DNA from: Gekko japonicus
Taxonomy: Eukaryota
DNA: 64,000 nt
Direction of reading: 5' to 3'
Assembly: GCF_001447785.1 (NCBI RefSeq)
Contig: NW_015161963.1
Location: 1-64,000 of the forward strand
Both the position numbers and the translations under genes were made by a program. Position 1 is the stretch's first letter. Each line of letters opens with the position of its first letter. Positions 22,336 to 57,693 of this stretch are shown here, in pieces. The notes under the pieces are model-generated. The model saw only the letters and a program-made list of their open reading frames with translations, made no database searches and had not been told where the DNA came from.

Positions 22336-25300
22336 ATAAAAAAAAGTCTAGCTTGCCATCTAGTGGTGCATAACACTAAAGAGCTAGAAGTCTGGCTGCC
22401 AGGCAATCTTAAGATCTCCTGGCTATTCTACACACAATGCCATACTATAATTAATTATCTTCCTTCGCCTGGGATTTTGAACTGTGCAACTGCTCATATA
22501 TACATGGAGCTCTCTGTCATTCTAAAGAGGCATCGAGCTTTTCCATCCACTCCCACCAGACAATGTAATTTGCATATTGGCATAATTTGCAGGGCTATCC
22601 TAAGCAGAGTTGACTTGCTAAGACCATTGATTTCAGTGGACTTAGAAGGCTGTAATTATGCTTAGTCCATTAATAATTCCCCTATGGTTCTAGCTTTGTT
22701 TCCTTTGAGGACAAACAACCCTCTCCCCCTCTTCCTTCTTCTGCCAGGTTTGCTTTCAGGCCAAGTAGCTGGAGCAGCAAGACATTCCAACTTGACAGGG
22801 CCTAAATACCTGCAAAATGGCACTACCCCTTCCTGTCCCCACCCTCTTCTCTCTCCACTTCCAAGTCAGGGATGCCTGCCTTCTTAGGACTTTGCTGCTG
22901 CTGCTGCTGGATTATCTTGACAACAGATGCCTGGCTTACCATGTCTCATCTCCATTTACTGCATTTCAAAAACAGCTTTCAGCATGTGAGATGGTGTGGA
23001 GTGGTTGTGGAATTTGCGGTGCCCCGTAGCCCTGTTACTTGCATGCAGCTGTCTGCCTTACCACTGTCAGCCTCCCAATGCAGTCGTATGCAGAGTGACT
23101 CCAGTCTAAGACCACTTATTTCAATGGGATTAGACTGGACTAATTCTGCATTGGATTATACTCTATGTAGCAAGGTGTACAGCTATGGAGTCTGAGACTC
23201 TTTGCTTGGAGGAAGCAATTGCTTGGGGGGGGGGGAGACTTGCTTTACAGAGTTGGGAAGCAGACTATGTAAAGAAGCTTTTGGAGTGCTGGGATTTTTT
23301 CTCCCCGGGTTAAAGTAAACCAGCCAGACTCCTCCAATGTGGACAAAGGGATACTGGTGAGAAGGAGAAAGGGTAGTGAGGAGTACACCTGGGGCATGAG
23401 GGCATGCGTGCATCCTCCCTGTGCTGGATTTGTTGGTTCCCCACCTATGATGGGTTTACCATAGCTCCATATGCACCTCCACGGTGTGCAGGGGCAGGGA
23501 GTGACTGAGGAACCCTGCTTCCTGCCCCTCTTTCCAGGAGTGCTGAACATGCCACATCTACAAAATATGGTGGATCGTGTTGTTTTCCCCTGCCCAATCC
23601 GCTCCCACATTGGTTTGCTGCCTCCCATTGTGGAATATTCTGTAGGGCAAGGCTTGGCTCTTAACCCTCTGGAAATGTCTTTGCAAAGTCTGCTTCCTGG
23701 CTCTAGAGCAGAACCTCACCTCTCAAGTTGACTGCCCTGCTTCCTTTGAGAAGTCCGCAGGTAAAAGAGAGGCTTCCCTCTGAACTGCAAATGCATCAGT
23801 ATTTTTAATGAATATTGTTCATCTGTCCTGGAGAAACTCAAAACAGTTTTGAGAACTGCTGGACAGTATCATACAACCTAGAGTTATATCCTCTGGTACC
23901 CTGTGCTAGCTACAACCGCTTGACAATTTTAATCTGTGCACTCATGAGTCACATCCTATCAGAAGAACTATACAAAGGTGATATTAAAACCACAGTATAC
24001 TTGTATGCTTCTGTGAGAAGAACCACAAACAGGCTCTGAAGTTGGATCCAGAGCAAAATGCTGTCTTGCAGTTCTTGAGTTACTTTTGCATGTGGCTTGG
24101 ACAGAGGTGAGATGCAAAGATAAGGTCAGTTTAGTTTCTTCTCTCCAGCATGACTACCCAGTGATACATGTGCCTGGCTTTCCTATAATTGCTGGCCCAC
24201 GTTTCTGGAATCTAGTATTCTGTTTCCAACAGTGGCTGGCCAGATGTCTTGGGGAAGCTCAGACACAGTGCATTCTGATTATTCTCATCTCACTCTTCCT
24301 CAGGACAAGATCTGTGCCCCACCCTTCCATTTTATTATTTAAACAACCCTGTGAGGTAACTTAAGCTGAAAGAGAACACTGGCCTAAGGTGCCCCAGTGA
24401 GTTTCACAGCTGATTGGAGATTTGAACCTTAGTCTCCTCATTCTGGCTTTCTGAAGGTGATGGCTGCTTCCTGTTTTTTAAAATGTGTTTGTTTACTTCA
24501 TTTATGCCCACCTTTCTCCACAAAGTGGCTTACAACATTCTCCCCTTCTAATTTTTATCCTCGCAGCAAGGCTTTGTGGTAGGTTGTGCTGGGTCTGGGA
24601 GTGTGTGCCTAGACCAAGTTCACCCATGAAGCTTCCATGGCAGCCATGGCAAAATGGGGATAAAAGCCTGGATCCTTGTCTGAAGCTCAGAACTACTATA
24701 CAATGTTGGCTCTGTCTTCTCCTTAGTCTCTGGTATTGAGAATCATTCTGCCTTTGGACATGTAAAGTCCATTTAACTAGCATAGCTAATTTCTTCCTCT
24801 GCGATTTCCCCTCTTTTTGCTGTTTTTGCACTCAGGTTTTGATGTGTGTCTGAGCTAGTGGCCATCACCAGATCCTATGGAGGGGAATTCCTTAGGTTAA
24901 TTACGTATTATATGTTAAAAAAATTAACTTTTTTGTGTTTGTGTGTGGCCAGAGTGGAGAAAATTCTCATGCATACAGGATGGTTGTTGGGCATTCTCAG
25001 GATTCCTTATGCTATTGACTCCAGCTGTAACCACAGAAAGCAGCTTCTAGAGGGTCTTGGGACTGTGTGCTGGAGCTCCTTCTACTCCATCACTACCTGC
25101 CTCCGCTCTGTTCCCTTTGCACTTCCATACACCTGCAGTTCTTCTTCACCTTCCTTTCTACTTTCAGATGGATAAGGAGCACTGCACAGCCATTCCATTT
25201 GCTCCATTGACTTTGGTACTCCCACAGGAGCTCTGATATGCACATGGCGTTCCATGTGAGACGGAGCATCCGTGTTTAATGTCAGAAATTCTTTGTTGGT

Positions 25301-31533: not shown

Positions 31534-31553
31534 NNNNNNNNNNNNNNNNNNNN
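31534..31553. other. Assembly gap (20 N)
   Basis: Run of N. Confidence 1.
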
Positions 31554-39512: not shown

Positions 39513-39931
39513 AAGGCCAGAAATGCTCACATTCGGACCAGATTGAGAGTTCAGATTCCTATGGCGATCTCTCCGATGCCAGCGACCTCAAGACCCCCGA
39601 GAAACAAAACGCCAATGGTTCCTTCTCCTGCGACATGGTGGTCACCAAAAATAAATTGGAGTCAGAGGGAGATAAGAAGTACCCCTGTCCTGAATGCGGA
39701 AGCTTTTTCAGATCCAAGTCCTATCTCAACAAACATATACAGAAAGTTCATGTTCGCTCCCTGGGGGCCCCATTAGGGGACTTGGGCCCTGCACTGGGCT
39801 CCCCCTTTTCACCCCAACAGAACATGTCTCTTCTGGAATCATTTGGGTTTCAGATTGTTCAGTCTGCATTTGCATCCTCCCTAGTGGATCCAGAGGTCGA
39901 CCAGCAACCAATGGGGCCGGATGGAAAATGA
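39513..39931 (+). CDS. PATZ1: PATZ1 exon 5, terminal coding part: (E)GQKCSHSDQIESSDSYGDLSDASDLKTPEK...YPCPECGSFFRSKSYLNKHIQKVH...QQPMGPDGK*
   Basis: Polypyrimidine tract then TAG|AAG acceptor; last C2H2 finger; TGA at 39929-39931. Confidence 0.96.
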
Positions 39932-48818: not shown

Positions 48819-49049
48819 GTTAAACATATGTATCTGTTAATGTGAACATGAACATGCTGCAGCTCTGTACACCTGAGGTTGTCCTATTGAACATTCTGTA
48901 GGGAGTAGCTATAATTACACCGTTGAATTCCTGTAGCATTTTAAAAAATATCCAAAGTGAAGCTATTGCCTTTGCTGTTGGTTTCCCACTGCACCTCCCA
49001 ATGGAATACAGTCTCCAAGCATGCGTGGTGTCTCCTTGCGTCCAGCATG

Positions 49050-50700
49050 CTTCTGAAAAGCCACACTCGAACGCCTGTCTGTCTTCAGCATCCAACACCT
49101 CTGATAGACTGCGTCCGAGCCTAGAAGCTCCCTTTTGCAGGCAGGCATCTCTGCCTTCCCTGCTTAGGACCCAGCAGGCGTCGGCGAAGGCGTCTCGGCT
49201 ACAGCCGCAGCAGCTCCGGGCTGAGGAGGTGGAGCTGCAGTTCTTTAAAAAGACCAGCCTTGTTTACTGCAAACGAGAAACGAGTCGGACAGAGCCGGGG
49301 CCGCGGCGTCGCGCTGCTCTGGCCATGGAGCCCAGCTGGGCTCGGGCGCTACTTGTGAGCTGCTGGGCACTGCTCGCCTTGGCCTCCGCCGCCGAAGGTG
49401 AGCTTCGCAACTGCACCCCACCCCCCGCTCAATCGGGTCGGGCACATCCCCCCCCCCGCGGCTCCATCTTGGCTGGAGCGAACAAAGGCGAACTCCGGAC
49501 CGGCGCCCCTTTAATTGAACCCCCCCCCCCGGCCCCCCCCCCTCTTTCGGCAAGAAGAGGGAGCTGCGACAGGGCGACCCGCCCGCCGACTCCCCCCTTC
49601 CCTGCTTGGCTCCATTTTGGCTCCGCATTCTCGCTGCCTGCAGCCATCTTTTAGCTTGAGGGTCCTGCGTGGGGTTTTTTTGCAAGAGGGTGGCAGTTCC
49701 CGCAGGCTCTCCTTCACCCTGCCTACCCCCCCGTGCCGCTGATTGCGCCAGGTTCAGCCCCAGGGCCGGGGGTGGCTTGGTAGGAGCAGCACGAGCGGAG
49801 CTGCTTCCAGCGGTGTTTTGCAGCGCTTTTTGCTGCTTTGCAGCGATTCCGGTTTGGACTGATGGGTTAAGAGGGAACGAAGAGAATTCCTGAGATTGCA
49901 GAGAGGGGCGGCTGCCGGGTTGTGGAGGGGTCCCGCAGACAACGGGGAGCTCGATGCACGCAGCGGGCAGCGACTGGCCCCATCACCGAGTCCCCACCCC
50001 CTTCCCGTGCTTCTCCGAGTTGGTTCACAAGTGCATCCTGTATGCTCATAACTGAACGCGCGGCCGAACATGTGAGTGGGGCAATGTACGTAATATGCAT
50101 ACAACGGCGGGCCGTGGACCGCCTTCACACACGCGCGAAGCTCACGCACGCGTTGAAATGCCCACGGTAACTAAGCCTCTGCCACCAGCAAACCTGTTTC
50201 TCGAGTGCCTGGTGTGAGGAACGGTCGCCTGTCGCACTACAGCTACTGGGGTGGGGGGCAACGCAGGACAGGCGAGCAACAGCTGTCTTGGCCAGCAACT
50301 GGGACGCTCGCACACTCTGCAAGCGCTTAGAGGCACTGCACGGCCGAGGGCAGAGCGAGCGGCTTCCTGCATTGCGCAAGTAGCGCAGCCAAAAGCCCAT
50401 GATACCGCTGTCTCGTGATTGGCTGACACTGTTTCCAGGCCTCGAGCCAGCTTTCCATTGGATGCGGCTTTCGGCTGATGTCATTCTTCAAGCTGCCTGG
50501 TCTAGGCATGTAAACAACCTGGTCGCGCCCCCTGCACGTGGGCGGCCGCTTATGAGGCTCGCCCTTTCTCTGCGCGGTTAGCTTAGCTGCTTGCAAGGGA
50601 GGGCGGGTGGCGTGCAAAGAGGGGGTGGGGTGTTTTTTGCCTAGTGCATTTGTTACCAGAGCCGTATCCGACGTAAATGGGTCTTTTGGCGGGCGATACT
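49050..50700. promoter_or_regulatory. CpG island over the PIK3IP1 promoter, exon 1 and proximal intron 1
   Basis: Visibly GC- and CpG-dense relative to the CpG-depleted flanks. Contains TTGTTTAC (49260-49267), GTAAACAA (50510-50517), ATTGG boxes, CACGTG and GGGCGG motifs. Confidence 0.8.
49325..49397 (+). CDS. PIK3IP1: PIK3IP1 coding exon 1, signal peptide MEPSWARALLVSCWALLALASAAE
   Basis: Strong Kozak context GCCATGG; hydrophobic signal peptide with an A-x-A type cleavage region; phase-1 donor GAAG|GTGAGC; lies in the CpG island upstream of clear PIK3IP1 exons. Confidence 0.85.
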
Positions 50701-51522
50701 GTTGCCAACCTCCAGGAGGGGCCTGGGAATCTCCCGGAATCACAACTGACCTCCAGCCTACAGAGATCGTCTCCCCTGGAGAAAATGCCTGTTTTGGAGG
50801 ATGGGGTGCATGGAGATGTTGCAAGGCCATACAGTTATAAGCACTGGGATCAAGGTGTGCCTGGCTGATGGGTCTTGGTTCTTCAGTGCCCCCTTTACAC
50901 AGTTACATATTGTGAAGCAAGCTACCCACTGACATCTTATGGCACTTGCACCTCTTCCTGGCTGATTCCTTATAATACTGCACATGTTCAGACTGGCACA
51001 TACACCATAATTGCAGACAGCAGAGGAAAGATGCAGGAGCAAACAGGAGGGTAAATGCATCAACTGAACATGTTGAATGGGTAGAAAAGAGTAGAATGGG
51101 TTGAAAAGTCCAGTAGCACCTTAAAGACTAACAAATTATGTGGCAGGGTATGAGGATTTGCGAGTCACTCCTCGCTTCTTCAGAAGTGAAAAATCTGAGT
51201 GAAGAAATATCTGAAGAAGTGAGCAGTAACTCAGGGAAGCTCATAACCTGCCACATATTTTGTTAGTCTTTAAGGTGCTACTGGACTCTTGCTCTTTTGT
51301 ACTGCTACAGATGGACTGACAGGGCTACCCATCTTGATCTATCATCGAATGGGTGTTACGCAACCTGTTGTCTACTTGTTGAGGAATATTATGCATATCA
51401 GAGCATGGTGGTATTGCAACCAGCAACACCATTTCTAGTCTGCCCTCAGATCACCATGTTACATTCAGGAAACACATTTCTTGGAGCAAACTGGATGCCA
51501 ATTTTTCTCCCCTCTCTGACAG

Positions 51523-51708
51523 ATGTTACCTCTAGTGTATTACCTGCTGTTACCGCCAAAACTATGGATGCTGCAGAAGGAGACCACATTTTTGAATCTG
51601 CTAATAGCTTACCATCCCGGAGTGAGGCAGCTGCTGTTCAGCCGGTCGTTGGGATTAGCCAGCGGGTCAAGATGCGATCAAATGAAAAAAAAGATTTGGG
51701 CACCCTAG
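51523..51708 (+). CDS. PIK3IP1: PIK3IP1 stalk exon (equivalent to mammalian exon 4): (D)VTSSVLPAVTAKTMDAAEGDHIFESANSLPSRSEAAAVQPVVGISQRVKMRSNEKKDLGTL(G)
   Basis: Pyrimidine tract then ACAG|AT acceptor, and CTAG|GTATGT donor. The signature RSEAAAVQPV(I/V)GISQRV...EKKDLGTLG is recognisable. Confidence 0.93.
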   Translation: MLPLVYYLLLPPKLWMLQKETTFLNLLIAYHPGVRQLLFSRSLGLASGSRCDQMKKKIWAP

Positions 51709-51923
51709 GTATGTTGGGTTTCCTGTAAATACCCAGAAATAATGCTTGATACTCAAGATAGATTTGTTTCAGAGTTGTGAGCCATATCTAGAGAGCCAGT
51801 ACAGTAGAGTTGGTTAGAAAACTGGACTAGGATTTTCAAATCCCCACTCTGCTTGTAAGAGTTCACTGGGTGAGTTCTGATAAGTCACACTCAGTCTGGC
51901 CTACCTCACAGGGTTGGTGTTGG

Positions 51924-52308
51924 CAGGGGTCATTTTGTAGAAAAAGAGGTGCAGGAGCTCATTAGCACAATTTATTAGCATAACTTATTAGCATATGCCA
52001 CACCCCCTGACATCACCGGAAGTGTGTCAGAAGGCAACACCCACCGCTCAGGCTCCACTGGACTGTTTTGGATTGCTAGCTATTGGGGGGGGGGGACACA
52101 CGCAGATCTGCTCTCACAGAGGAGGGAGAGCTTGTACCTGAACGCGGAGGGGGGGGGGCTCTGCAACTTACATGGCTGCTGCTTGCTTCTTATGGCCCCA
52201 CTGAGGGCTGCTGGGAGCAGGGGGCGGGGCTTATTGCATGTGCTCACCCCCTGATGTGCTTACTGCCGGAGCTCCGCTCCTGTGCGCTCCCGCAGGAAAT
52301 GACCCCTC
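51924..52308. mobile_element. hAT MITE inserted in a SINE within a PIK3IP1 intron
   Basis: TIRs CAGGGGTCATTT / AAATGACCCCTC; perfect 8-bp TSD GGTGTTGG. Confidence 0.88.
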
Positions 52309-52765
52309 GGTGTTGGAAGGATAAAATGGAAAAGAGGAGAATGTATTCTAAACTGCTTAGGGTTCCCACTGCATGGAGAAAAGTGGCACATAAATATGTA
52401 AACAAACAGAAGCTCCACACTTGGCTATCTGCACTTCCTAGTTTGTTCTGTGCTCTACACAACTTGCTTTCCATGCCCTGTGGTTACTGTTCCTTGATGG
52501 TACTATGGAATTTCAACATTCCTCACCTTTGCTTTTTCCAGCCCTCTTGGTCATCTTACCACATTCCAAAACCAATTCCAGATTTTCTTCAGAACCTGAA
52601 TTTTAGGAGAAATTCTTCTCCTAGACAAAAAAAATGCTTACAAATACAATTTCCATAGTTTCACTGTAGAATTTGGATTGATGGGTGCACAGACACTTGG
52701 CAGGTTGTTTAACTGCTGCTGCATCATTAAAGTGCACTTCTCTCTCGCCCCCTTCCCCCAAACAG

Positions 52766-52844
52766 GCTATGTGATGGGACTTATCATGATGGTGATCATC
52801 ATTGCCATTGGAACAGGAATTGTTGTGGGCTACATCTACAAAAG
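52766..52844 (+). CDS. PIK3IP1: PIK3IP1 transmembrane exon (79 nt, GC donor): (G)YVMGLIMMVIIIAIGTGIVVGYIYK(R)
   Basis: AACAG|GC acceptor; hydrophobic TM helix; donor AAAG|GCAAGT, phase 2. Confidence 0.92.
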
Positions 52845-55511
52845 GCAAGTATCATAGGAAGTTTCTTCCCTCTGAGGAACCTAAGCATTTGAGTGTAACC
52901 TTGCGGTGTAGCAAAAGTCTACCCATTACCCCACCCACTCCTCTTCGGTCTTACAAGTGGCTCAGCAGTTTCCGTGCTAAAATCATAATTCTGCTTCACT
53001 ACTACTAGGACAGTCTCTGGGTTTCCGCCCCCACTCCTCAGAGTAGCAGCTCCCTCTCCCCTCTGGGCAGTAACCAAGCAGACCAATCACAAAGATGCGA
53101 TGCAGCAATACAACCAGACAGTCAGCCTTGCCCTCTCAAGCCAGTGCTTCACTTTGTCCTCCCAGTGGCTTTACTGCAAGGCCAAGGTAGCCTGAGCAGC
53201 TTCCACTACTGAAGTGCCCTCAGGCCTAAGCTATCTTTGCTGCTTTCCCCTTGCTTAGTCACAGCCCAGGGGCCAACTTAAAGGACATGTTCACTTGCAC
53301 AAGGTCGGGGAGGCGTGCTCTCAGTTGGAGCCTTTGAGTCAATCACTCCCAGAGGGAGAAAACAGTCCACCTTATTTGGTATTGTGGAAGGTGCTGCTGT
53401 TTACCTTTGAGGCGTTGTCCTTTTGTGAAGGAAGCTTTACAGCTCAAAAGAAGCTGAAGTTGAAGGAATGAGAGGATAAACAAAAGGGAATGCCTTTTAA
53501 AATGTTTGCTAAGCACTAATTGGTTTAAGGATACATTTGCCCAAGGAATTGGTGGAGGGGCAGTAAAGATTCCCTTAGCCAAAATTCTTTCATTACTGTG
53601 TTAGGATGGAAACATTCCTCACAGCCTCATTTCCATTCATTTCTAAGGATTGAATCCTGAAGCAAAGAGAATGCTTTCATCCCTATACTTGAATTCAGAA
53701 TTAAAGTACTTGAATTCAGAATCTTCAGACACTTCTGGCAGGGAAACAATAACAGTGACAATGGTCATAAAGAGGGAATGGTTTTATTGTCTGTCACTAG
53801 GACTCATTTTGCTGGAAGGATTTCAAAAGCCTACATTCCTTCTTGGCCCTTGTATTTGCAAGCAGTTGATAGGAAAGGGGTAGCTTGCCACAACACCTGA
53901 CCGTTACTTTGACAGCTTCCCATGTCTCAACTTACTTTCTTCATGGGAAGTGTAATGTTTAAATCATGCCCCACAGAATTTAGGCCAGGGCTTCCAAAGC
54001 AGACCAGGGTCTATTTTTTTCTGAAAAAGAAGATTAAGTACTGATGGAATGGGTCTGACCTGGCTATGTAACATTCCTAGAAACTAGGTGGGGGCAGTTT
54101 ATCTCCAGGGTTGTTGGGTTTTTTGGGAGTAGGGGTGGGGGAGTGACACAAGGAAACTTCAGATATGTGCAATACTTGGCTTTCCTATCAAACCTAAACT
54201 TGTTTTATTGCTTTAATAGCATACTGTATCATCTAACCTGTAGATAGCATATAACATTGTACTGTTTGGCATATTTATGGAATTTAAAAGGAAAGTGCCT
54301 TAAGTATGAGAAGCAAAATGGTACATTCATTCACCCAATCCTTGATAGTGCTGCACATTGCTGCAAGCAGTGCTACCTGAGCACATATATCTTAATTTCT
54401 GCTGCATGCCAAAAAATGAAGTAGAAAACATATGTGTATGATGTAAATAGGAGTTACCCTTACCCTGTAGCTTCTTACATGAAATATTTCATGCTCTATG
54501 AGTCAATCCCTGTCCTAAAACACATTTTACTCATTCCAAAAGGGGGAAAACCTTTTAAGTACCACAGCATTCCTAGATACAGTTTTTGTAAAGATAAAGA
54601 ATATACCAATAAGTTGGCCTCACAGTATTTTTTTTGTGCTGCAAGGGTCAGATGAGGTGGTTATACTGTTACCTTCCCACAAGCCTTCCACTGGGTTACA
54701 AATAGTGTTGAGTAATAGTGAGTGACCCCCTCCCTCAGCCTTGCATAACTGCTGAGGGAGGGGCTGCCTCAGATGCATTCCTCAGTGCCACCCTCGTGAT
54801 CACTTAAATAGCAGCCTAGCAACCATTGTGCCTAGCTTACGCCTCAGGGAGGTTTCTCTACAGAAATCATTGTTGAGGCAGACTTGCAAAAGCAATGGGG
54901 TGTGTTTGGGGGGTGCTCTCTTATTATTCAAAATAAAAAAGAATCATGTGCCAACCTTAAGGTCCTGGGCCCTGTGGAGAAGCAGTTCACTACATCCTGC
55001 TTGTGCTACTGTACAACAGCCTACAAAGCAGGACTAGATGGGCCACTATTCTGATCCCAGCAGGCTGCTCTTACATTCTGTTAGGGCAGCCCTCTCCCTG
55101 ACCTTGTTGAGAGTTGCAGGGTACACCTGACCACAGGATAGCCACTGTGGAGGCTGGGGTCAGTCACAAAATGTGAGGGGACACCTGGCCAAAAATCCTT
55201 CAGTGATGGAGGGAGCTGTTTCCAAACTGGTGCTCCCTGTAGACACAAAGTTGATTCTTCCCATACTCTTCTGTTCTACCTCCTGTTCCACTGAGCTGGA
55301 GGAAGTCCAGGGTTGTCCCTTTCTTTGTGGCAGGAGGAAGCGGACACCAATGAACACATTGTAGGGAACCACATTGGAGACCAATGGGCTATGGTCCTCT
55401 GCTTCCAGATGCAGTGAGGTCTCTTGAGTTACAACTCCCCATGTTGTCCCCCCTTCTTGAGAAAAAACTCTCCTGGCCCTAGACTAACAAGGTTAACAGT
55501 AATTAAAAGAT

Positions 55512-55554
55512 NNNNNNNNNNNNNNNNNNNNNNNNNNNNNNNNNNNNNNNNNNN
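55512..55554. other. Assembly gap (43 N) in the last PIK3IP1 intron
   Basis: Run of N. Confidence 1.
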
Positions 55555-56062
55555 ACTGCATCTTGCAATACCAGCTTCACTAAAAGAACTCATTGACCCT
55601 CAGTGAATCTGTAGGGTTTTGCTTGCAAGTATCATCCCTTCAGCCAGGAAAGGGTTAAGCTGAAGTTTCTGTAAGCTAATAGCAGCAAGTTTAGCCTAGA
55701 ACCAATTAGGTGTAGAGTAGATTCTTAATGAGGTGACCTTAAGATTGACTATTGGCTTATCAATATATTGGAGACAGTTCATGCTATTCTGCAAGTACAC
55801 AAGGGATGAAGCTTTGGGGGGAAACTTCCATTCCTTCCTTCTTAGGGTCAGAGGGAACAAAGAAATGAGATGCAGCAAATCAGAACTAGAAAGATGAGTT
55901 AGAGTTGTTTTCTTTCCATGTAATCCTTTCCCTAATTTTGAAGTACACTTTTCCTTAAGAAGTTAAACATACAGGTGTCTGTGCTGCATTCTTCTGCCGT
56001 GCTTCATTTATTCTGCTAAACGTCCAACAGAACCAACCATCTTTCATCCTCTCTGTCTTCAG

Positions 56063-56270
56063 GGGGAAAGATCTCAAGCAGCAGCATGAGCAGAAAGCTT
56101 ATGAGCGTGAAATGCAGAGGATCACGTTGCCACTCTCAGCATTCACCAACCAAGCCTGTGAGCTGGTGGACGAGAACACGGTTGTGGTGCACACCACTCA
56201 GACACCTGTGGAGGAAATGCACAATGGCGATGCACCCTTGATGGGCCAGGCAGGCACTCCCGGAGCCTGA
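56063..56270 (+). CDS. PIK3IP1: PIK3IP1 terminal coding exon, cytoplasmic p85-like tail: (R)GKDLKQQHEQKAYEREMQRITLPLSAFTNQACELVDENTVVVHTTQTPVEEMHNGDAPLMGQAGTPGA*
   Basis: TCTTCAG|G acceptor; signatures EREMQRITLPLSAFTN and PLMGQAGTPGA*; TGA at 56268-56270. Not listed in the ORF track. Confidence 0.95.
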
Positions 56271-57693
56271 TCACAGAGCGCTAGAAGATAACTCTGCTTT
56301 GACCACCACAAGCCCCTCTCCTCTCATCCTTGATAATGGGAGTTGGTTTTTTTTTTCTGGTAAGGGAGGGATAAGATGCCCACACAGAGAGAAAAGATTT
56401 GTAAAGGGTGTCAGTACTGGCTCATCCACAGTAGTCTGCTGATGCAGAGCAGATCCCTGGACTGTAGGACTAGTGGAGCTCTGGCCTGAAGCTGTTCTTC
56501 CTCCTGTGTCTCTAGAGTGCTACAAGTGAAGTAGCCCTGTGATTCCTGCAGTGGAGTGCAGCAAGTCTGCTGCTAAGGAGGCCACTGTCCTCTCCCTTCA
56601 GTTCTCCTTTCAGTGTGGATGGTGTTCACAATTCTTGGTACCTATAAGCTCTTTTAACTGGGGTGGGTGGGGAGCTTAAGAAAGGTGTGTGAATATCTGG
56701 AATGTAGATTTTATTTTTGTGTGTGTGACAGCTGCCAAAGGAGCAGCAGTGCCACCACCAAAACCCTAGCACATGTCGGTGGTTTAGTGATTGAGGAATT
56801 TTATTTGGCAGTCAATATTCTAATTTTTAAAAAGCCAGGTAGTCTGTGGGACACTTCCCATATGCTGAAGATTCAGCTGTAGCGGAGAATGGCTTCCTTG
56901 GCACTGGGCCAAGGGAGGATGGGAAGAAACAGCAAAAAAAACCCCAACAACACCAAAACCCCTTTCTACTGCCCCCAAGGCTGTTAATAATAATCCAGGT
57001 CTTCCATGGCCCAATCCTTACCTGCCTGAAAATAAGAAATATGGTCCTCTGTGTTTGTCCCCACAACTTGCTAGGGACCCCCCACACACACACAGTCTCT
57101 GGGATCAGGGAACAGCCTGGAGCCGCCTCCTCCTGAAGCCAGCCAGTTTGGTTTAGCAGTTAGATTTAGGAGGAATGGAGAGAATTTTGACCCCAAAGGG
57201 ATTATTTCTACACTCCTTTCCCCAGAGGTTCGTTTCCAGGGCGGAAAAGAAAGTGTTAAGAAAAGGGTTTGCTAGGTTAAACCTGACCGAAAAGACTTCG
57301 CTAAAAGGAAAGTGCCAGTCAGTGACAGAGGGATGCCCTGCGGTTCCAAGAGTGAAAGGTTCGGGGCCTCTTCCTGAAAACTAGCCAGTTTGGGTAAAGA
57401 CTGCTTAAGCAGCTGTATTAGTAGAGCTAAAGCACGTATGGGTGAGTTTTGGCCAGAGGTGGATGGAGACCGGAAAAGGCACAGAAGACATAGCTGAACA
57501 TGTCGGCAAAGGGCTGATTCCACTCATACAGATATTTTAACCCTTCTCCACTCGAGGGCCTCCAAGCTGCCAAGAGTAACAATTTCTTGCAAATTATATC
57601 CATGAGCAAGAACAAGGGAAACATTTTTAAATTTTTTAAATGCCTTTGAATACCGTTTCTTTGTAAGCATCTTAAAATACCTCATGATTATGA

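What the first reader, a model, noticed from the sequence alone, without database searches (positions are those of the whole stretch)
49325..56270. PIK3IP1 appears to have lost its kringle domain by clean removal of a phase-1/phase-1 module
Seen: the signal-peptide exon (phase 1, ends 49397) joins in frame to the stalk exon (starts 51523), giving 73+186+79+208 = 546 nt, or 181 aa (...ASAAE|DVTSSVLPA...). The 2125-bp intron between them has no N gap, and reading it by eye I found no kringle signature (CxW-DNG-xYR, CLNW, NYCRNPD, PWCY). The mature ectodomain has no cysteines. Established: mammalian PIK3IP1 (TrIP/HGFL, 263 aa in human) has two kringle exons here; kringle modules are classically flanked by phase-1 introns; the kringle has been reported to matter for PIK3IP1 regulation and function in T cells. 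Inference: this lineage encodes a kringle-less, possibly ligand-independent PI3K brake that keeps a conserved TM helix and p85-like tail. I cannot tell whether this is already known for squamates.
Basis: partly seen in the sequence, partly recalled or inferred. Interest (0 to 1): 0.82.

Follow-up and report, generated by a model that had tools for sequence, protein, structure and literature searches.

The report
Kringle-less PIK3IP1 gene in a gecko
The Japanese gecko's PIK3IP1 gene, a membrane-bound brake on PI3K signalling, has no kringle domain in its DNA or its messenger RNA; public gene models show the same for nearly all lizards and snakes, although mouse work found the kringle necessary for function.

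Summary
The window is Gekko japonicus. Its four-exon PIK3IP1 model (73+186+79+208 nt, 181 aa) matches residues 109-289 of RefSeq XP_015285064.1 exactly.

RNA-seq shows the direct splice 49397>51523: 36 and 80 reads in two runs, plus a 1436-nt transcript contig from a third study. Intron 1 has no N. It shows no kringle by motif scan, Pfam, tblastn or a PIK3IP1-specific kringle HMM. The N gap at 55512-55554 lies in intron 3, and RNA joins exon 3 to exon 4 across it.

The loss is not peculiar to this species:
- Kringle-less models with the same signal-peptide|stalk junction occur in five geckos, lacertids, a teiid, anguimorphs, agamids, seven snakes and the skink Tiliqua.
- Among squamates only Hemicordylus (Cordylidae) and Lerista (Scincidae) carry the kringle.
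- Turtles, crocodilians, birds, amphibians and fish all carry it.

The juxtamembrane stalk, TM helix and tail stay 85-88% identical to a turtle's, so the shortened protein is under constraint.

The protein models are already public, but I found no paper that notes the loss. Function without the kringle is inferred, not tested.

The parts
49257..49324 (+). 5' UTR of PIK3IP1. RNA-supported 5' ends lie at about 49257-49294.
   Evidence: The X4 transcript contig starts at 49257 and molecules begin at 49294 in X23. There is no ATG between 49257 and 49325.
49325..49397 (+). Exon 1 coding part (73 nt, ends in phase 1). It encodes the signal peptide (24 residues plus the first base of the next codon), with a likely cleavage after the A-S-A motif.
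   Evidence: It equals residues 109-132 of XP_015285064.1. The signal-peptide reading is inferred from the sequence pattern.
49398..51522 (+). Intron 1 (2125 bp, GT..AG, no N). Its first ~1.3 kb are GC-rich (0.59-0.67). This is where the two kringle exons sit in other vertebrates, and no trace of them is found here.
   Evidence: Spliced out in RNA.
51523..51708 (+). Exon 2 (186 nt, phase 1 to phase 1). It encodes the Cys-free stalk. The N-terminal half is variable. The juxtamembrane half is highly conserved (motif AAVQPVVGISQRV...KKDLGTL).
51709..52765 (+). Intron 2 (1057 bp, GT..AG). It holds very high-copy interspersed repeats.
   Evidence: Joint 51708|52766 is seen in 49 reads (X21), 307 reads (X23) and the X4 contig.
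52766..52844 (+). Exon 3 (79 nt). It encodes the transmembrane helix with a G-x-x-x-G motif and the Y-K-R stop-transfer. The donor is GC (52845-52846).
   Evidence: RNA ends and loose ends at 52844/52845 continue into exon 4.
52845..56062 (+). Intron 3 (GC..AG). It contains the assembly gap 55512-55554, which is therefore non-coding.
56063..56270 (+). Exon 4 coding part (208 nt, stop at 56268-56270). It encodes the cytoplasmic 'p85-like' tail of 68 residues. The 3' UTR continues beyond.
   Evidence: The tail is 97% identical to Eublepharis, 88% to turtle and 72% to fish.

Best explanation
This is the Gekko japonicus orthologue of PIK3IP1 (also called TrIP). The two exons that encode the kringle have been removed from intron 1. 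The phase-1 signal-peptide exon now splices directly and constitutively to the phase-1 stalk exon.

The product is a 181-aa type I membrane protein. It has a short, cysteine-free and probably unstructured ectodomain of about 65 residues after signal-peptide cleavage. It has a TM helix with a conserved small-x-x-x-small motif. It has an almost invariant 68-residue cytoplasmic tail.

Shown here: the gene structure, the absence of kringle-coding sequence, the spliced mRNA, the same architecture in four other geckos and in most other squamates, and unrelaxed conservation of the remaining parts.

Inferred:
- The protein still acts as a membrane-anchored inhibitor of class I PI3K through its tail, as described for mammalian PIK3IP1.
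- Whatever the kringle contributes in mammals (oligomerisation, placement near the receptor, ligand-dependent shedding) is either dispensable in squamates or supplied by the conserved juxtamembrane stalk and TM helix.
- The loss was made easy because the kringle cassette is phase-symmetric, so skipping it keeps the frame.

The confidence given (0.6) is for the whole statement including the inferred function. For the structural part alone (real, expressed, kringle-less orthologue) I put it at about 0.9.
For: - Gene model and splice sites.
- Identity to XP_015285064.1 residues 109-289.
- RNA junction reads in three runs from two studies, and none in the DNA run.
- Four independent negative searches for kringle sequence, with positive controls.
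- PATZ1 lies immediately upstream on the same strand.
- Pfam PF00051 is present in Hemicordylus (59.5 bits) and Lerista (60.3 bits). It is absent in Gekko, Paroedura, Sphaerodactylus, Eublepharis, Tiliqua, Podarcis, Pogona and Liasis.
- The alignment shows the gap exactly at the module borders.
- Gecko versus turtle identity is 85% (conserved stalk), 85% (TM) and 88% (tail). The kringle-bearing Hemicordylus gives 82, 81 and 88%.
- Models that skip the cassette in whole or in part exist in turtles and birds (Pelusios, Lepidochelys X3, Opisthocomus X3, Willisornis).
Against: - In mouse T cells a kringle-deleted TrIP failed to suppress pS6 and behaved like a dominant negative (PMC6279406). A kringle-less protein is therefore not expected to be a working brake on mammalian evidence alone.
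- No functional data exist for any squamate.
- The DNA run sampled gave only about 1x depth over unique sequence, so the continuity of intron 1 in this assembly was not tested independently with reads.
- Only the best-supported joints and loose ends were listed (112 and 782 not shown), so a rare transcript with extra exons cannot be excluded.
Confidence: 0.6

Rival explanations
1. Assembly artefact. The kringle exons exist in the gecko genome but fell out of this GC-rich, homopolymer-laden intron 1 during assembly.
For: The first ~1.3 kb of intron 1 are 59-67% GC with long C runs, the kind of sequence that short-read assemblies lose. The window has N gaps elsewhere. The DNA run gave too little depth to test continuity.
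Against: - mRNA reads join 49397 directly to 51523 in three runs, and the shown list holds no competing joint or loose end at either site. Missing exons would show as loose ends.
- Four other gecko assemblies, three on sequences of 49-75 Mb, give the same kringle-less model.
Confidence: 0.03
2. The kringle-less mRNA is only one isoform. A kringle-bearing form is made from exons elsewhere (outside the window or in a paralogue) in tissues not sampled.
For: Whole or partial kringle-skipping isoforms are annotated in turtles and birds that do have the exons. The tissues of the RNA runs are unknown. Weaker joints were not listed.
Against: - No kringle-coding sequence lies anywhere in the 64-kb window on the gene's strand.
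- In run X21 the exon1-exon2 junction count (36) is close to the exon2-exon3 count (49). Most exon-2-containing transcripts therefore come straight from exon 1.
- No gecko protein with a PIK3IP1-type kringle turned up in the kringle-directed search.
Confidence: 0.05
3. The gene is real and kringle-less, but the protein no longer works as a PI3K brake. It would be inert, a dominant-negative-like remnant, or kept for a different job carried by the conserved stalk, TM helix and tail.
For: Mouse kringle-deleted TrIP did not inhibit pS6 and even raised it (PMC6279406). The juxtamembrane stalk motif is more conserved from fish to gecko than the kringle itself, which hints at a function not yet described.
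Against: - The cytoplasmic tail, the part reported to bind p110, is as conserved in kringle-less squamates as in kringle-bearing relatives. This argues for the same intracellular partner.
- An inert protein would not stay 85-88% identical to a turtle's across all squamate lineages.
- In mouse, replacing the kringle with a cross-linkable CD8 ectodomain restored inhibition, so the kringle's role can be replaced.
Confidence: 0.25

Closest known systems
Mammalian PIK3IP1 / TrIP (human 263 aa, mouse), as described in PMC6279406 and PMC11615590
   Same: - Orthologous locus next to PATZ1.
- Signal peptide, unstructured stalk with the conserved juxtamembrane motif, single TM helix, and a near-identical cytoplasmic 'p85-like' tail ending in the same C-terminal motif.
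- Same exon phases.
   Different: - The whole kringle (about 78 residues, two exons) is missing, leaving no disulphide-bonded fold and no cysteine in the ectodomain.
- In mouse the kringle was needed for inhibition and for activation-induced loss from the cell surface.
Kringle-bearing squamate PIK3IP1: Hemicordylus capensis XP_053135763.1 / XP_053135761.1 and Lerista edwardsae KAJ6659048.1
   Same: Same signal-peptide end (..AAE) and same stalk start. 85-91% identity to the gecko in the conserved stalk, TM helix and tail.
   Different: They keep an intact six-cysteine kringle, with Pfam PF00051 at 59-60 bits. They show that the cassette was still present in the common ancestor of geckos and all other squamates apart from Dibamidae, which no model here samples.
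Annotated kringle-skipping or half-kringle isoforms in turtles and birds (Pelusios castaneus A0A8C8RMJ9, Lepidochelys kempii X3, Opisthocomus hoazin X3, Willisornis vidua)
   Same: The Pelusios and Willisornis models have the same signal-peptide-to-stalk junction as the gecko protein.
   Different: Close relatives of these species do have the kringle exons. The short forms are therefore optional isoforms or annotation artefacts. In the gecko the short form is the only one the locus can encode.

Membership tests
PIK3IP1 / TrIP orthologue group | Conserved cytoplasmic tail (the 'p85-like' region) at the C-terminus | tested here: met
   The exon 4 peptide (68 aa) found PIK3IP1 proteins only. It is 97% identical to Eublepharis, 79% to a primate-type sequence and about 72% to fish. 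It is 88% identical to turtle.
PIK3IP1 / TrIP orthologue group | Single-pass type I topology: N-terminal signal peptide and one TM helix before the tail | tested here: met
   A hydrophobic N-terminus with an A-S-A motif and a 22-residue hydrophobic stretch followed by Y-K-R can be read directly. Both align with all orthologues. No signal-peptide predictor was available, so cleavage is inferred.
PIK3IP1 / TrIP orthologue group | Conserved synteny: immediately downstream of PATZ1 on the same strand | tested here: met
   The ORF at 49-1008 matches PATZ1 chains 6guv, 2epp, 2epr and 2epq. The last PATZ1 zinc-finger exon ends near 39931. The human neighbourhood is from my own knowledge.
PIK3IP1 / TrIP orthologue group | Extracellular kringle domain (Pfam PF00051) | tested here: not met
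   There is no PF00051 in the protein. No kringle-coding sequence was found in intron 1 or anywhere in the window. The mRNA lacks it. The gene is therefore an orthologue by descent that fails the domain definition of the family.
PIK3IP1 / TrIP orthologue group | Binds p110 and lowers PI3K/Akt signalling | not testable with these tools
   This needs expression and biochemical assays.
Kringle-domain proteins | About 80-residue fold with six conserved cysteines and the CRNP / WC motifs | tested here: not met
   

The most novel reading that the evidence does not exclude
The kringle cassette of PIK3IP1 was lost from the genome several times independently within squamates: in Gekkota, in the ancestor of lacertoids plus Toxicofera, and within skinks. 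These losses would follow an ancestral stage in which the phase-symmetric cassette was already often skipped. The deeply conserved juxtamembrane stalk motif, not the kringle, would then be the indispensable extracellular element of this PI3K brake. Squamates would be a natural experiment on how TrIP works without its presumed ligand-binding domain.
Probability: 0.3. Interest if true: 0.65.

Novelty: new variant of a known kind. Interest (0 to 1): 0.5.

Why it matters
PIK3IP1/TrIP is studied as a checkpoint-like restraint on T-cell PI3K signalling. Its kringle is thought to be essential and perhaps ligand-binding, and its ligand is unknown.

A whole vertebrate order appears to run mostly on a kringle-less version while the stalk, TM helix and tail stay under tight constraint. 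That gives a natural test of what the kringle is for. It also points to the conserved juxtamembrane motif as an overlooked functional element.

The case is also a clean example of domain loss by removal of a phase-symmetric exon cassette, possibly a recurrent one. The result is comparative and descriptive: the sequences were already public, and no function has been tested.

Tried and rejected
- **Kringle in intron 1 or elsewhere in the window.** I looked with a regex, Pfam, tblastn and a custom HMM, and found nothing. The best HMM score in the whole window is a 21-residue match at 24927-25046 on the minus strand, inside a PATZ1 intron (11.5 bits, E=0.042). It lacks the conserved Cys and Trp, and I take it for chance.
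- **DNA reads as a test of intron 1 continuity.** Only 4% of the run was read, giving roughly 1x depth on unique sequence. This was uninformative.
- **Literature.** No paper in the searchable library links PIK3IP1 with squamates, or kringle loss with squamates. One search was badly framed, but it led to the squamate phylogeny paper.
- **Tuatara and Anolis.** Neither appeared among the listed hits, so their state is unknown.
- **Joined spliced model.** Exons were searched one by one by reference, and the public protein P0065, which contains the identical 181 residues, served for family scans and alignment.
- **Primate-type protein P0006.** It was returned by the representatives search and was among the queries of one local tblastn. 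Mammal-like rows were left out of later steps.
Full report
**What is in the sequence**

Reading 49200-56800 and checking borders by script gives four coding exons on the + strand:
- 49325-49397 (73 nt, followed by GT)
- 51523-51708 (186 nt, AG before, GT after)
- 52766-52844 (79 nt, AG before, GC after; the context AG|GCAAGT is a typical GC donor)
- 56063-56270 (208 nt, AG before, stop at 56268-70)

The three split codons read D, G and R.

The window has only two N runs, 31534-31553 and 55512-55554. The second lies in intron 3, far from any exon border. Intron 1 (49398-51522, 2125 bp) has none. The gap was not filled or looked up.

**Identity of the gene and of the genome**

The 68-residue peptide of exon 4, searched by reference against the representative protein library, found only PIK3IP1 proteins. 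A follow-up word search with the full-length hit P0002 listed the named orthologues.

One of them is P0065, RefSeq XP_015285064.1 of Gekko japonicus (289 aa). It contains all four exon peptides at consecutive positions 109-132, 134-194, 196-220 and 222-289, with the split-codon residues between them. The window is therefore G. japonicus, and the kringle-less model is already in RefSeq.

The 108-residue N-terminal extension of that RefSeq entry starts at window position 49001. RNA 5' ends lie at 49257-49294, and the first ATG after 49257 is 49325.

Upstream on the same strand lies PATZ1. The ORF at 49-1008 matches the solved PATZ1 BTB and zinc-finger chains 6guv, 2epp, 2epr and 2epq. The last zinc-finger exon ends near 39931. 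To my knowledge this is the same neighbourhood as in human 22q12, which supports orthology. An earlier scan note on PATZ1 in this window (s1-824404) gave me this lead.

**Is a kringle hidden in intron 1?**

Four searches say no.
1. A six-frame scan of the whole window for the most conserved kringle motifs found none.
2. Pfam on the twenty longest stop-free + strand pieces of intron 1, at E up to 10, gave no PF00051 match.
3. tblastn was run at very permissive settings with kringle-bearing PIK3IP1 proteins from Hemicordylus, Lerista, two turtles, alligator, rhea and fishes. It hit the four exons (E from 1e-37 to 0.02) and nothing else above noise. No kringle residues aligned to the + strand of intron 1.
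4. A profile built from 54 PIK3IP1 kringles was run on all 3232 six-frame pieces of the window. It scored at most 3.0 bits (E=19) on the + strand of intron 1. Each half of a real kringle, one exon's worth, scored 52-60 bits.

The best hit in the window (11.5 bits, E=0.042) lies on the minus strand at 24927-25046, inside a PATZ1 intron. It is a 21-residue match without the conserved Cys and Trp, and I take it for chance.

**Transcripts**

Public runs of the same species were found with the last exon and 3' UTR as the query. Four of them were laid on 49100-52950.
- The joint 49397|51523 (GT..AG, skipping 2125 bases) is seen in 36 reads of RNA run X21 and in 80 reads of RNA run X23, from 52 start places. 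It is also seen in one 1436-nt transcript contig of X4, from a different study. That contig runs 49257-49395, 51521-51706, 52764-52845 and on.
- The DNA run X22 shows none of these joints.
- The joint 51708|52766 is seen in 49 and 307 reads.
- Reads ending at 52845 continue with letters identical to the start of exon 4 (79 reads in X23). This confirms the GC donor and shows that the intron holding the N gap is spliced out.
- Depth in intron 1 is near zero.
- In X21 the exon1-exon2 junction count (36) is close to the exon2-exon3 count (49), so exon 2 is fed mainly from exon 1. The lower ratio in X23 fits the usual loss of coverage near a GC-rich 5' end.

Limits of this evidence:
- Only the best-supported joints and loose ends were listed.
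- The tissues are unknown.
- The DNA run was sampled at about 1x, so it does not test assembly continuity.

**How wide is the loss?**

The word search, a second search scored on the kringle of Hemicordylus alone, a cluster look-up, sequence retrieval and Pfam give a consistent picture.

Kringle-less models share the junction '..AAE | D(A/V)T..'. They are the only ones on record for:
- Five geckos: Gekko japonicus, G. kuhli, Paroedura picta, Sphaerodactylus townsendi, Eublepharis macularius
- Lacertids: Podarcis, Lacerta, Zootoca
- The teiid Salvator
- Elgaria and Varanus
- Pogona and Phrynocephalus
- Seven snakes
- The skink Tiliqua (both isoforms, 188 and 187 aa)

Only two squamates carry the kringle. 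Hemicordylus capensis (Cordylidae; 264 and 263 aa) has PF00051 at 59.5 bits. Lerista edwardsae (Scincidae; 269 aa) has it at 60.3 bits. The Lerista model was probably built without RNA support, because it reads through the GC donor.

Turtles, crocodilians, birds, salamanders and fishes have the kringle, so its presence is ancestral.

On the accepted molecular tree, Gekkota branch off before Scincoidea plus Episquamata (PMC3682911). A kringle in scincoids therefore means that geckos lost it separately from lacertoids plus Toxicofera, and Tiliqua perhaps separately again. The alternative is that the cassette was already commonly skipped in early squamates and decayed later in different lineages.

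Models that skip the cassette exist outside squamates. Pelusios and Willisornis skip all of it, and Lepidochelys X3 and Opisthocomus X3 skip half. Their reliability is uncertain.

**Is the shortened protein still constrained?**

In a 23-species alignment the gap coincides exactly with the module borders.

| Comparison with a turtle | Variable stalk | Conserved juxtamembrane stalk | TM helix | Tail |
|---|---|---|---|---|
| Gecko (kringle-less) | 23% | 85% | 85% | 88% |
| Hemicordylus (kringle-bearing) | 43% | 82% | 81% | 88% |
| Ratite birds (kringle-bearing) | 57% | 88-91% | 85% | 87% |

There is thus no sign of relaxed constraint after the loss. The juxtamembrane motif is nearly invariant from fish to gecko.

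**How it probably works**

Shown: a type I membrane protein with a short Cys-free ectodomain, a TM helix carrying a G-x-x-x-G motif, and the conserved tail.

From the literature:
- The tail region binds the p85/p110 PI3K heterodimer and damps its catalytic activity (PMC11615590; p110 via the p85-like domain, PMC6279406).
- In mouse T cells, deleting the kringle abolished inhibition of pS6 and prevented activation-induced loss from the surface. A CD8 ectodomain plus cross-linking could stand in for the kringle (PMC6279406).
- ADAM-type cleavage maps to the stalk, residues 120-133 (PMC11615590).

My inference, at about 55-60%, is that the gecko protein remains a membrane-tethered PI3K inhibitor acting through its tail. 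Self-association or positioning would be supplied by the TM helix and the conserved stalk, and regulation by shedding in the stalk may be retained. The chief rival, at about 25%, is that it does something else or acts differently, as the mouse deletion result would suggest.

**Comparison with what is known, and novelty**

By descent this is PIK3IP1. By domain content it fails the family's textbook definition.

The protein sequences have been public for years, for this species and for more than twenty other squamates. The bare fact is therefore not new. I found no paper that mentions it, and the patchy distribution within squamates seems undescribed. I class it as a new variant of a known kind, of moderate interest.

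**Procedural notes**
- The joined four-exon model was never sent to a search. Exons were searched separately by reference, and the public protein P0065 stood in for the joined product.
- One primate-type protein returned by the search (P0006) was among the queries of a local tblastn and was left out afterwards.

Noticed in passing
window 49001-49324: The RefSeq model XP_015285064.1 (289 aa) starts at an upstream in-frame ATG at 49001. RNA 5' ends lie at 49257-49294, and the first ATG in the transcript is 49325. The 108-residue N-terminal extension looks like an annotation artefact. The Eublepharis model (274 aa) and several snake models carry similar extensions.
   Followed up: yes
window 52845-52846: Exon 3 uses a GC donor (AG|GCAAGT), which RNA confirms. 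Models of Lerista edwardsae and Gekko kuhli read through this site and insert 14-21 spurious residues between the TM helix and the tail.
   Followed up: partly
window 51104-51421 and 51809-52324: Very high-copy interspersed repeats lie in introns 1 and 2, with up to about 12,000-fold depth in a DNA run that covers unique sequence about once. They include an 81-nt inverted repeat (51104-51184 / 51210-51290, 85% complementary) that looks like a small foldback element.
   Followed up: no
window 49337 and 51695: There are two coding variants in RNA reads. T>C at 49337 changes W5 to R in the signal peptide (all reads in X21, half in X23), and R is the residue in three of the other gecko species (Paroedura, Sphaerodactylus, Eublepharis). 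T>G at 51695 changes D to E in the conserved KKDLG motif (all reads in X21, none in X23).
   Followed up: no
window 24927-25046, minus strand: This is the best match in the window to the PIK3IP1-kringle profile: 21 residues around an 'RNP.....P.C' pattern (11.5 bits, E=0.042), inside a PATZ1 intron. It lacks the conserved Cys and Trp, and I take it for chance.
   Followed up: partly
window 49-39931, + strand: PATZ1 occupies the first 40 kb. Part of its first exon (end of the BTB domain, AT-hook region and first zinc fingers) lies at 49-1008, and its last zinc-finger exon ends near 39931. Matches to solved PATZ1 chains confirm it.
   Followed up: partly
proteins P0082 (Lepidochelys kempii X3) and P0136 (Opisthocomus hoazin X3): These annotated isoforms skip only the second kringle exon, leaving half a kringle joined in frame to the stalk. 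This suggests each kringle exon is individually phase-symmetric and that splicing around the cassette is loose in turtles and birds.
   Followed up: no
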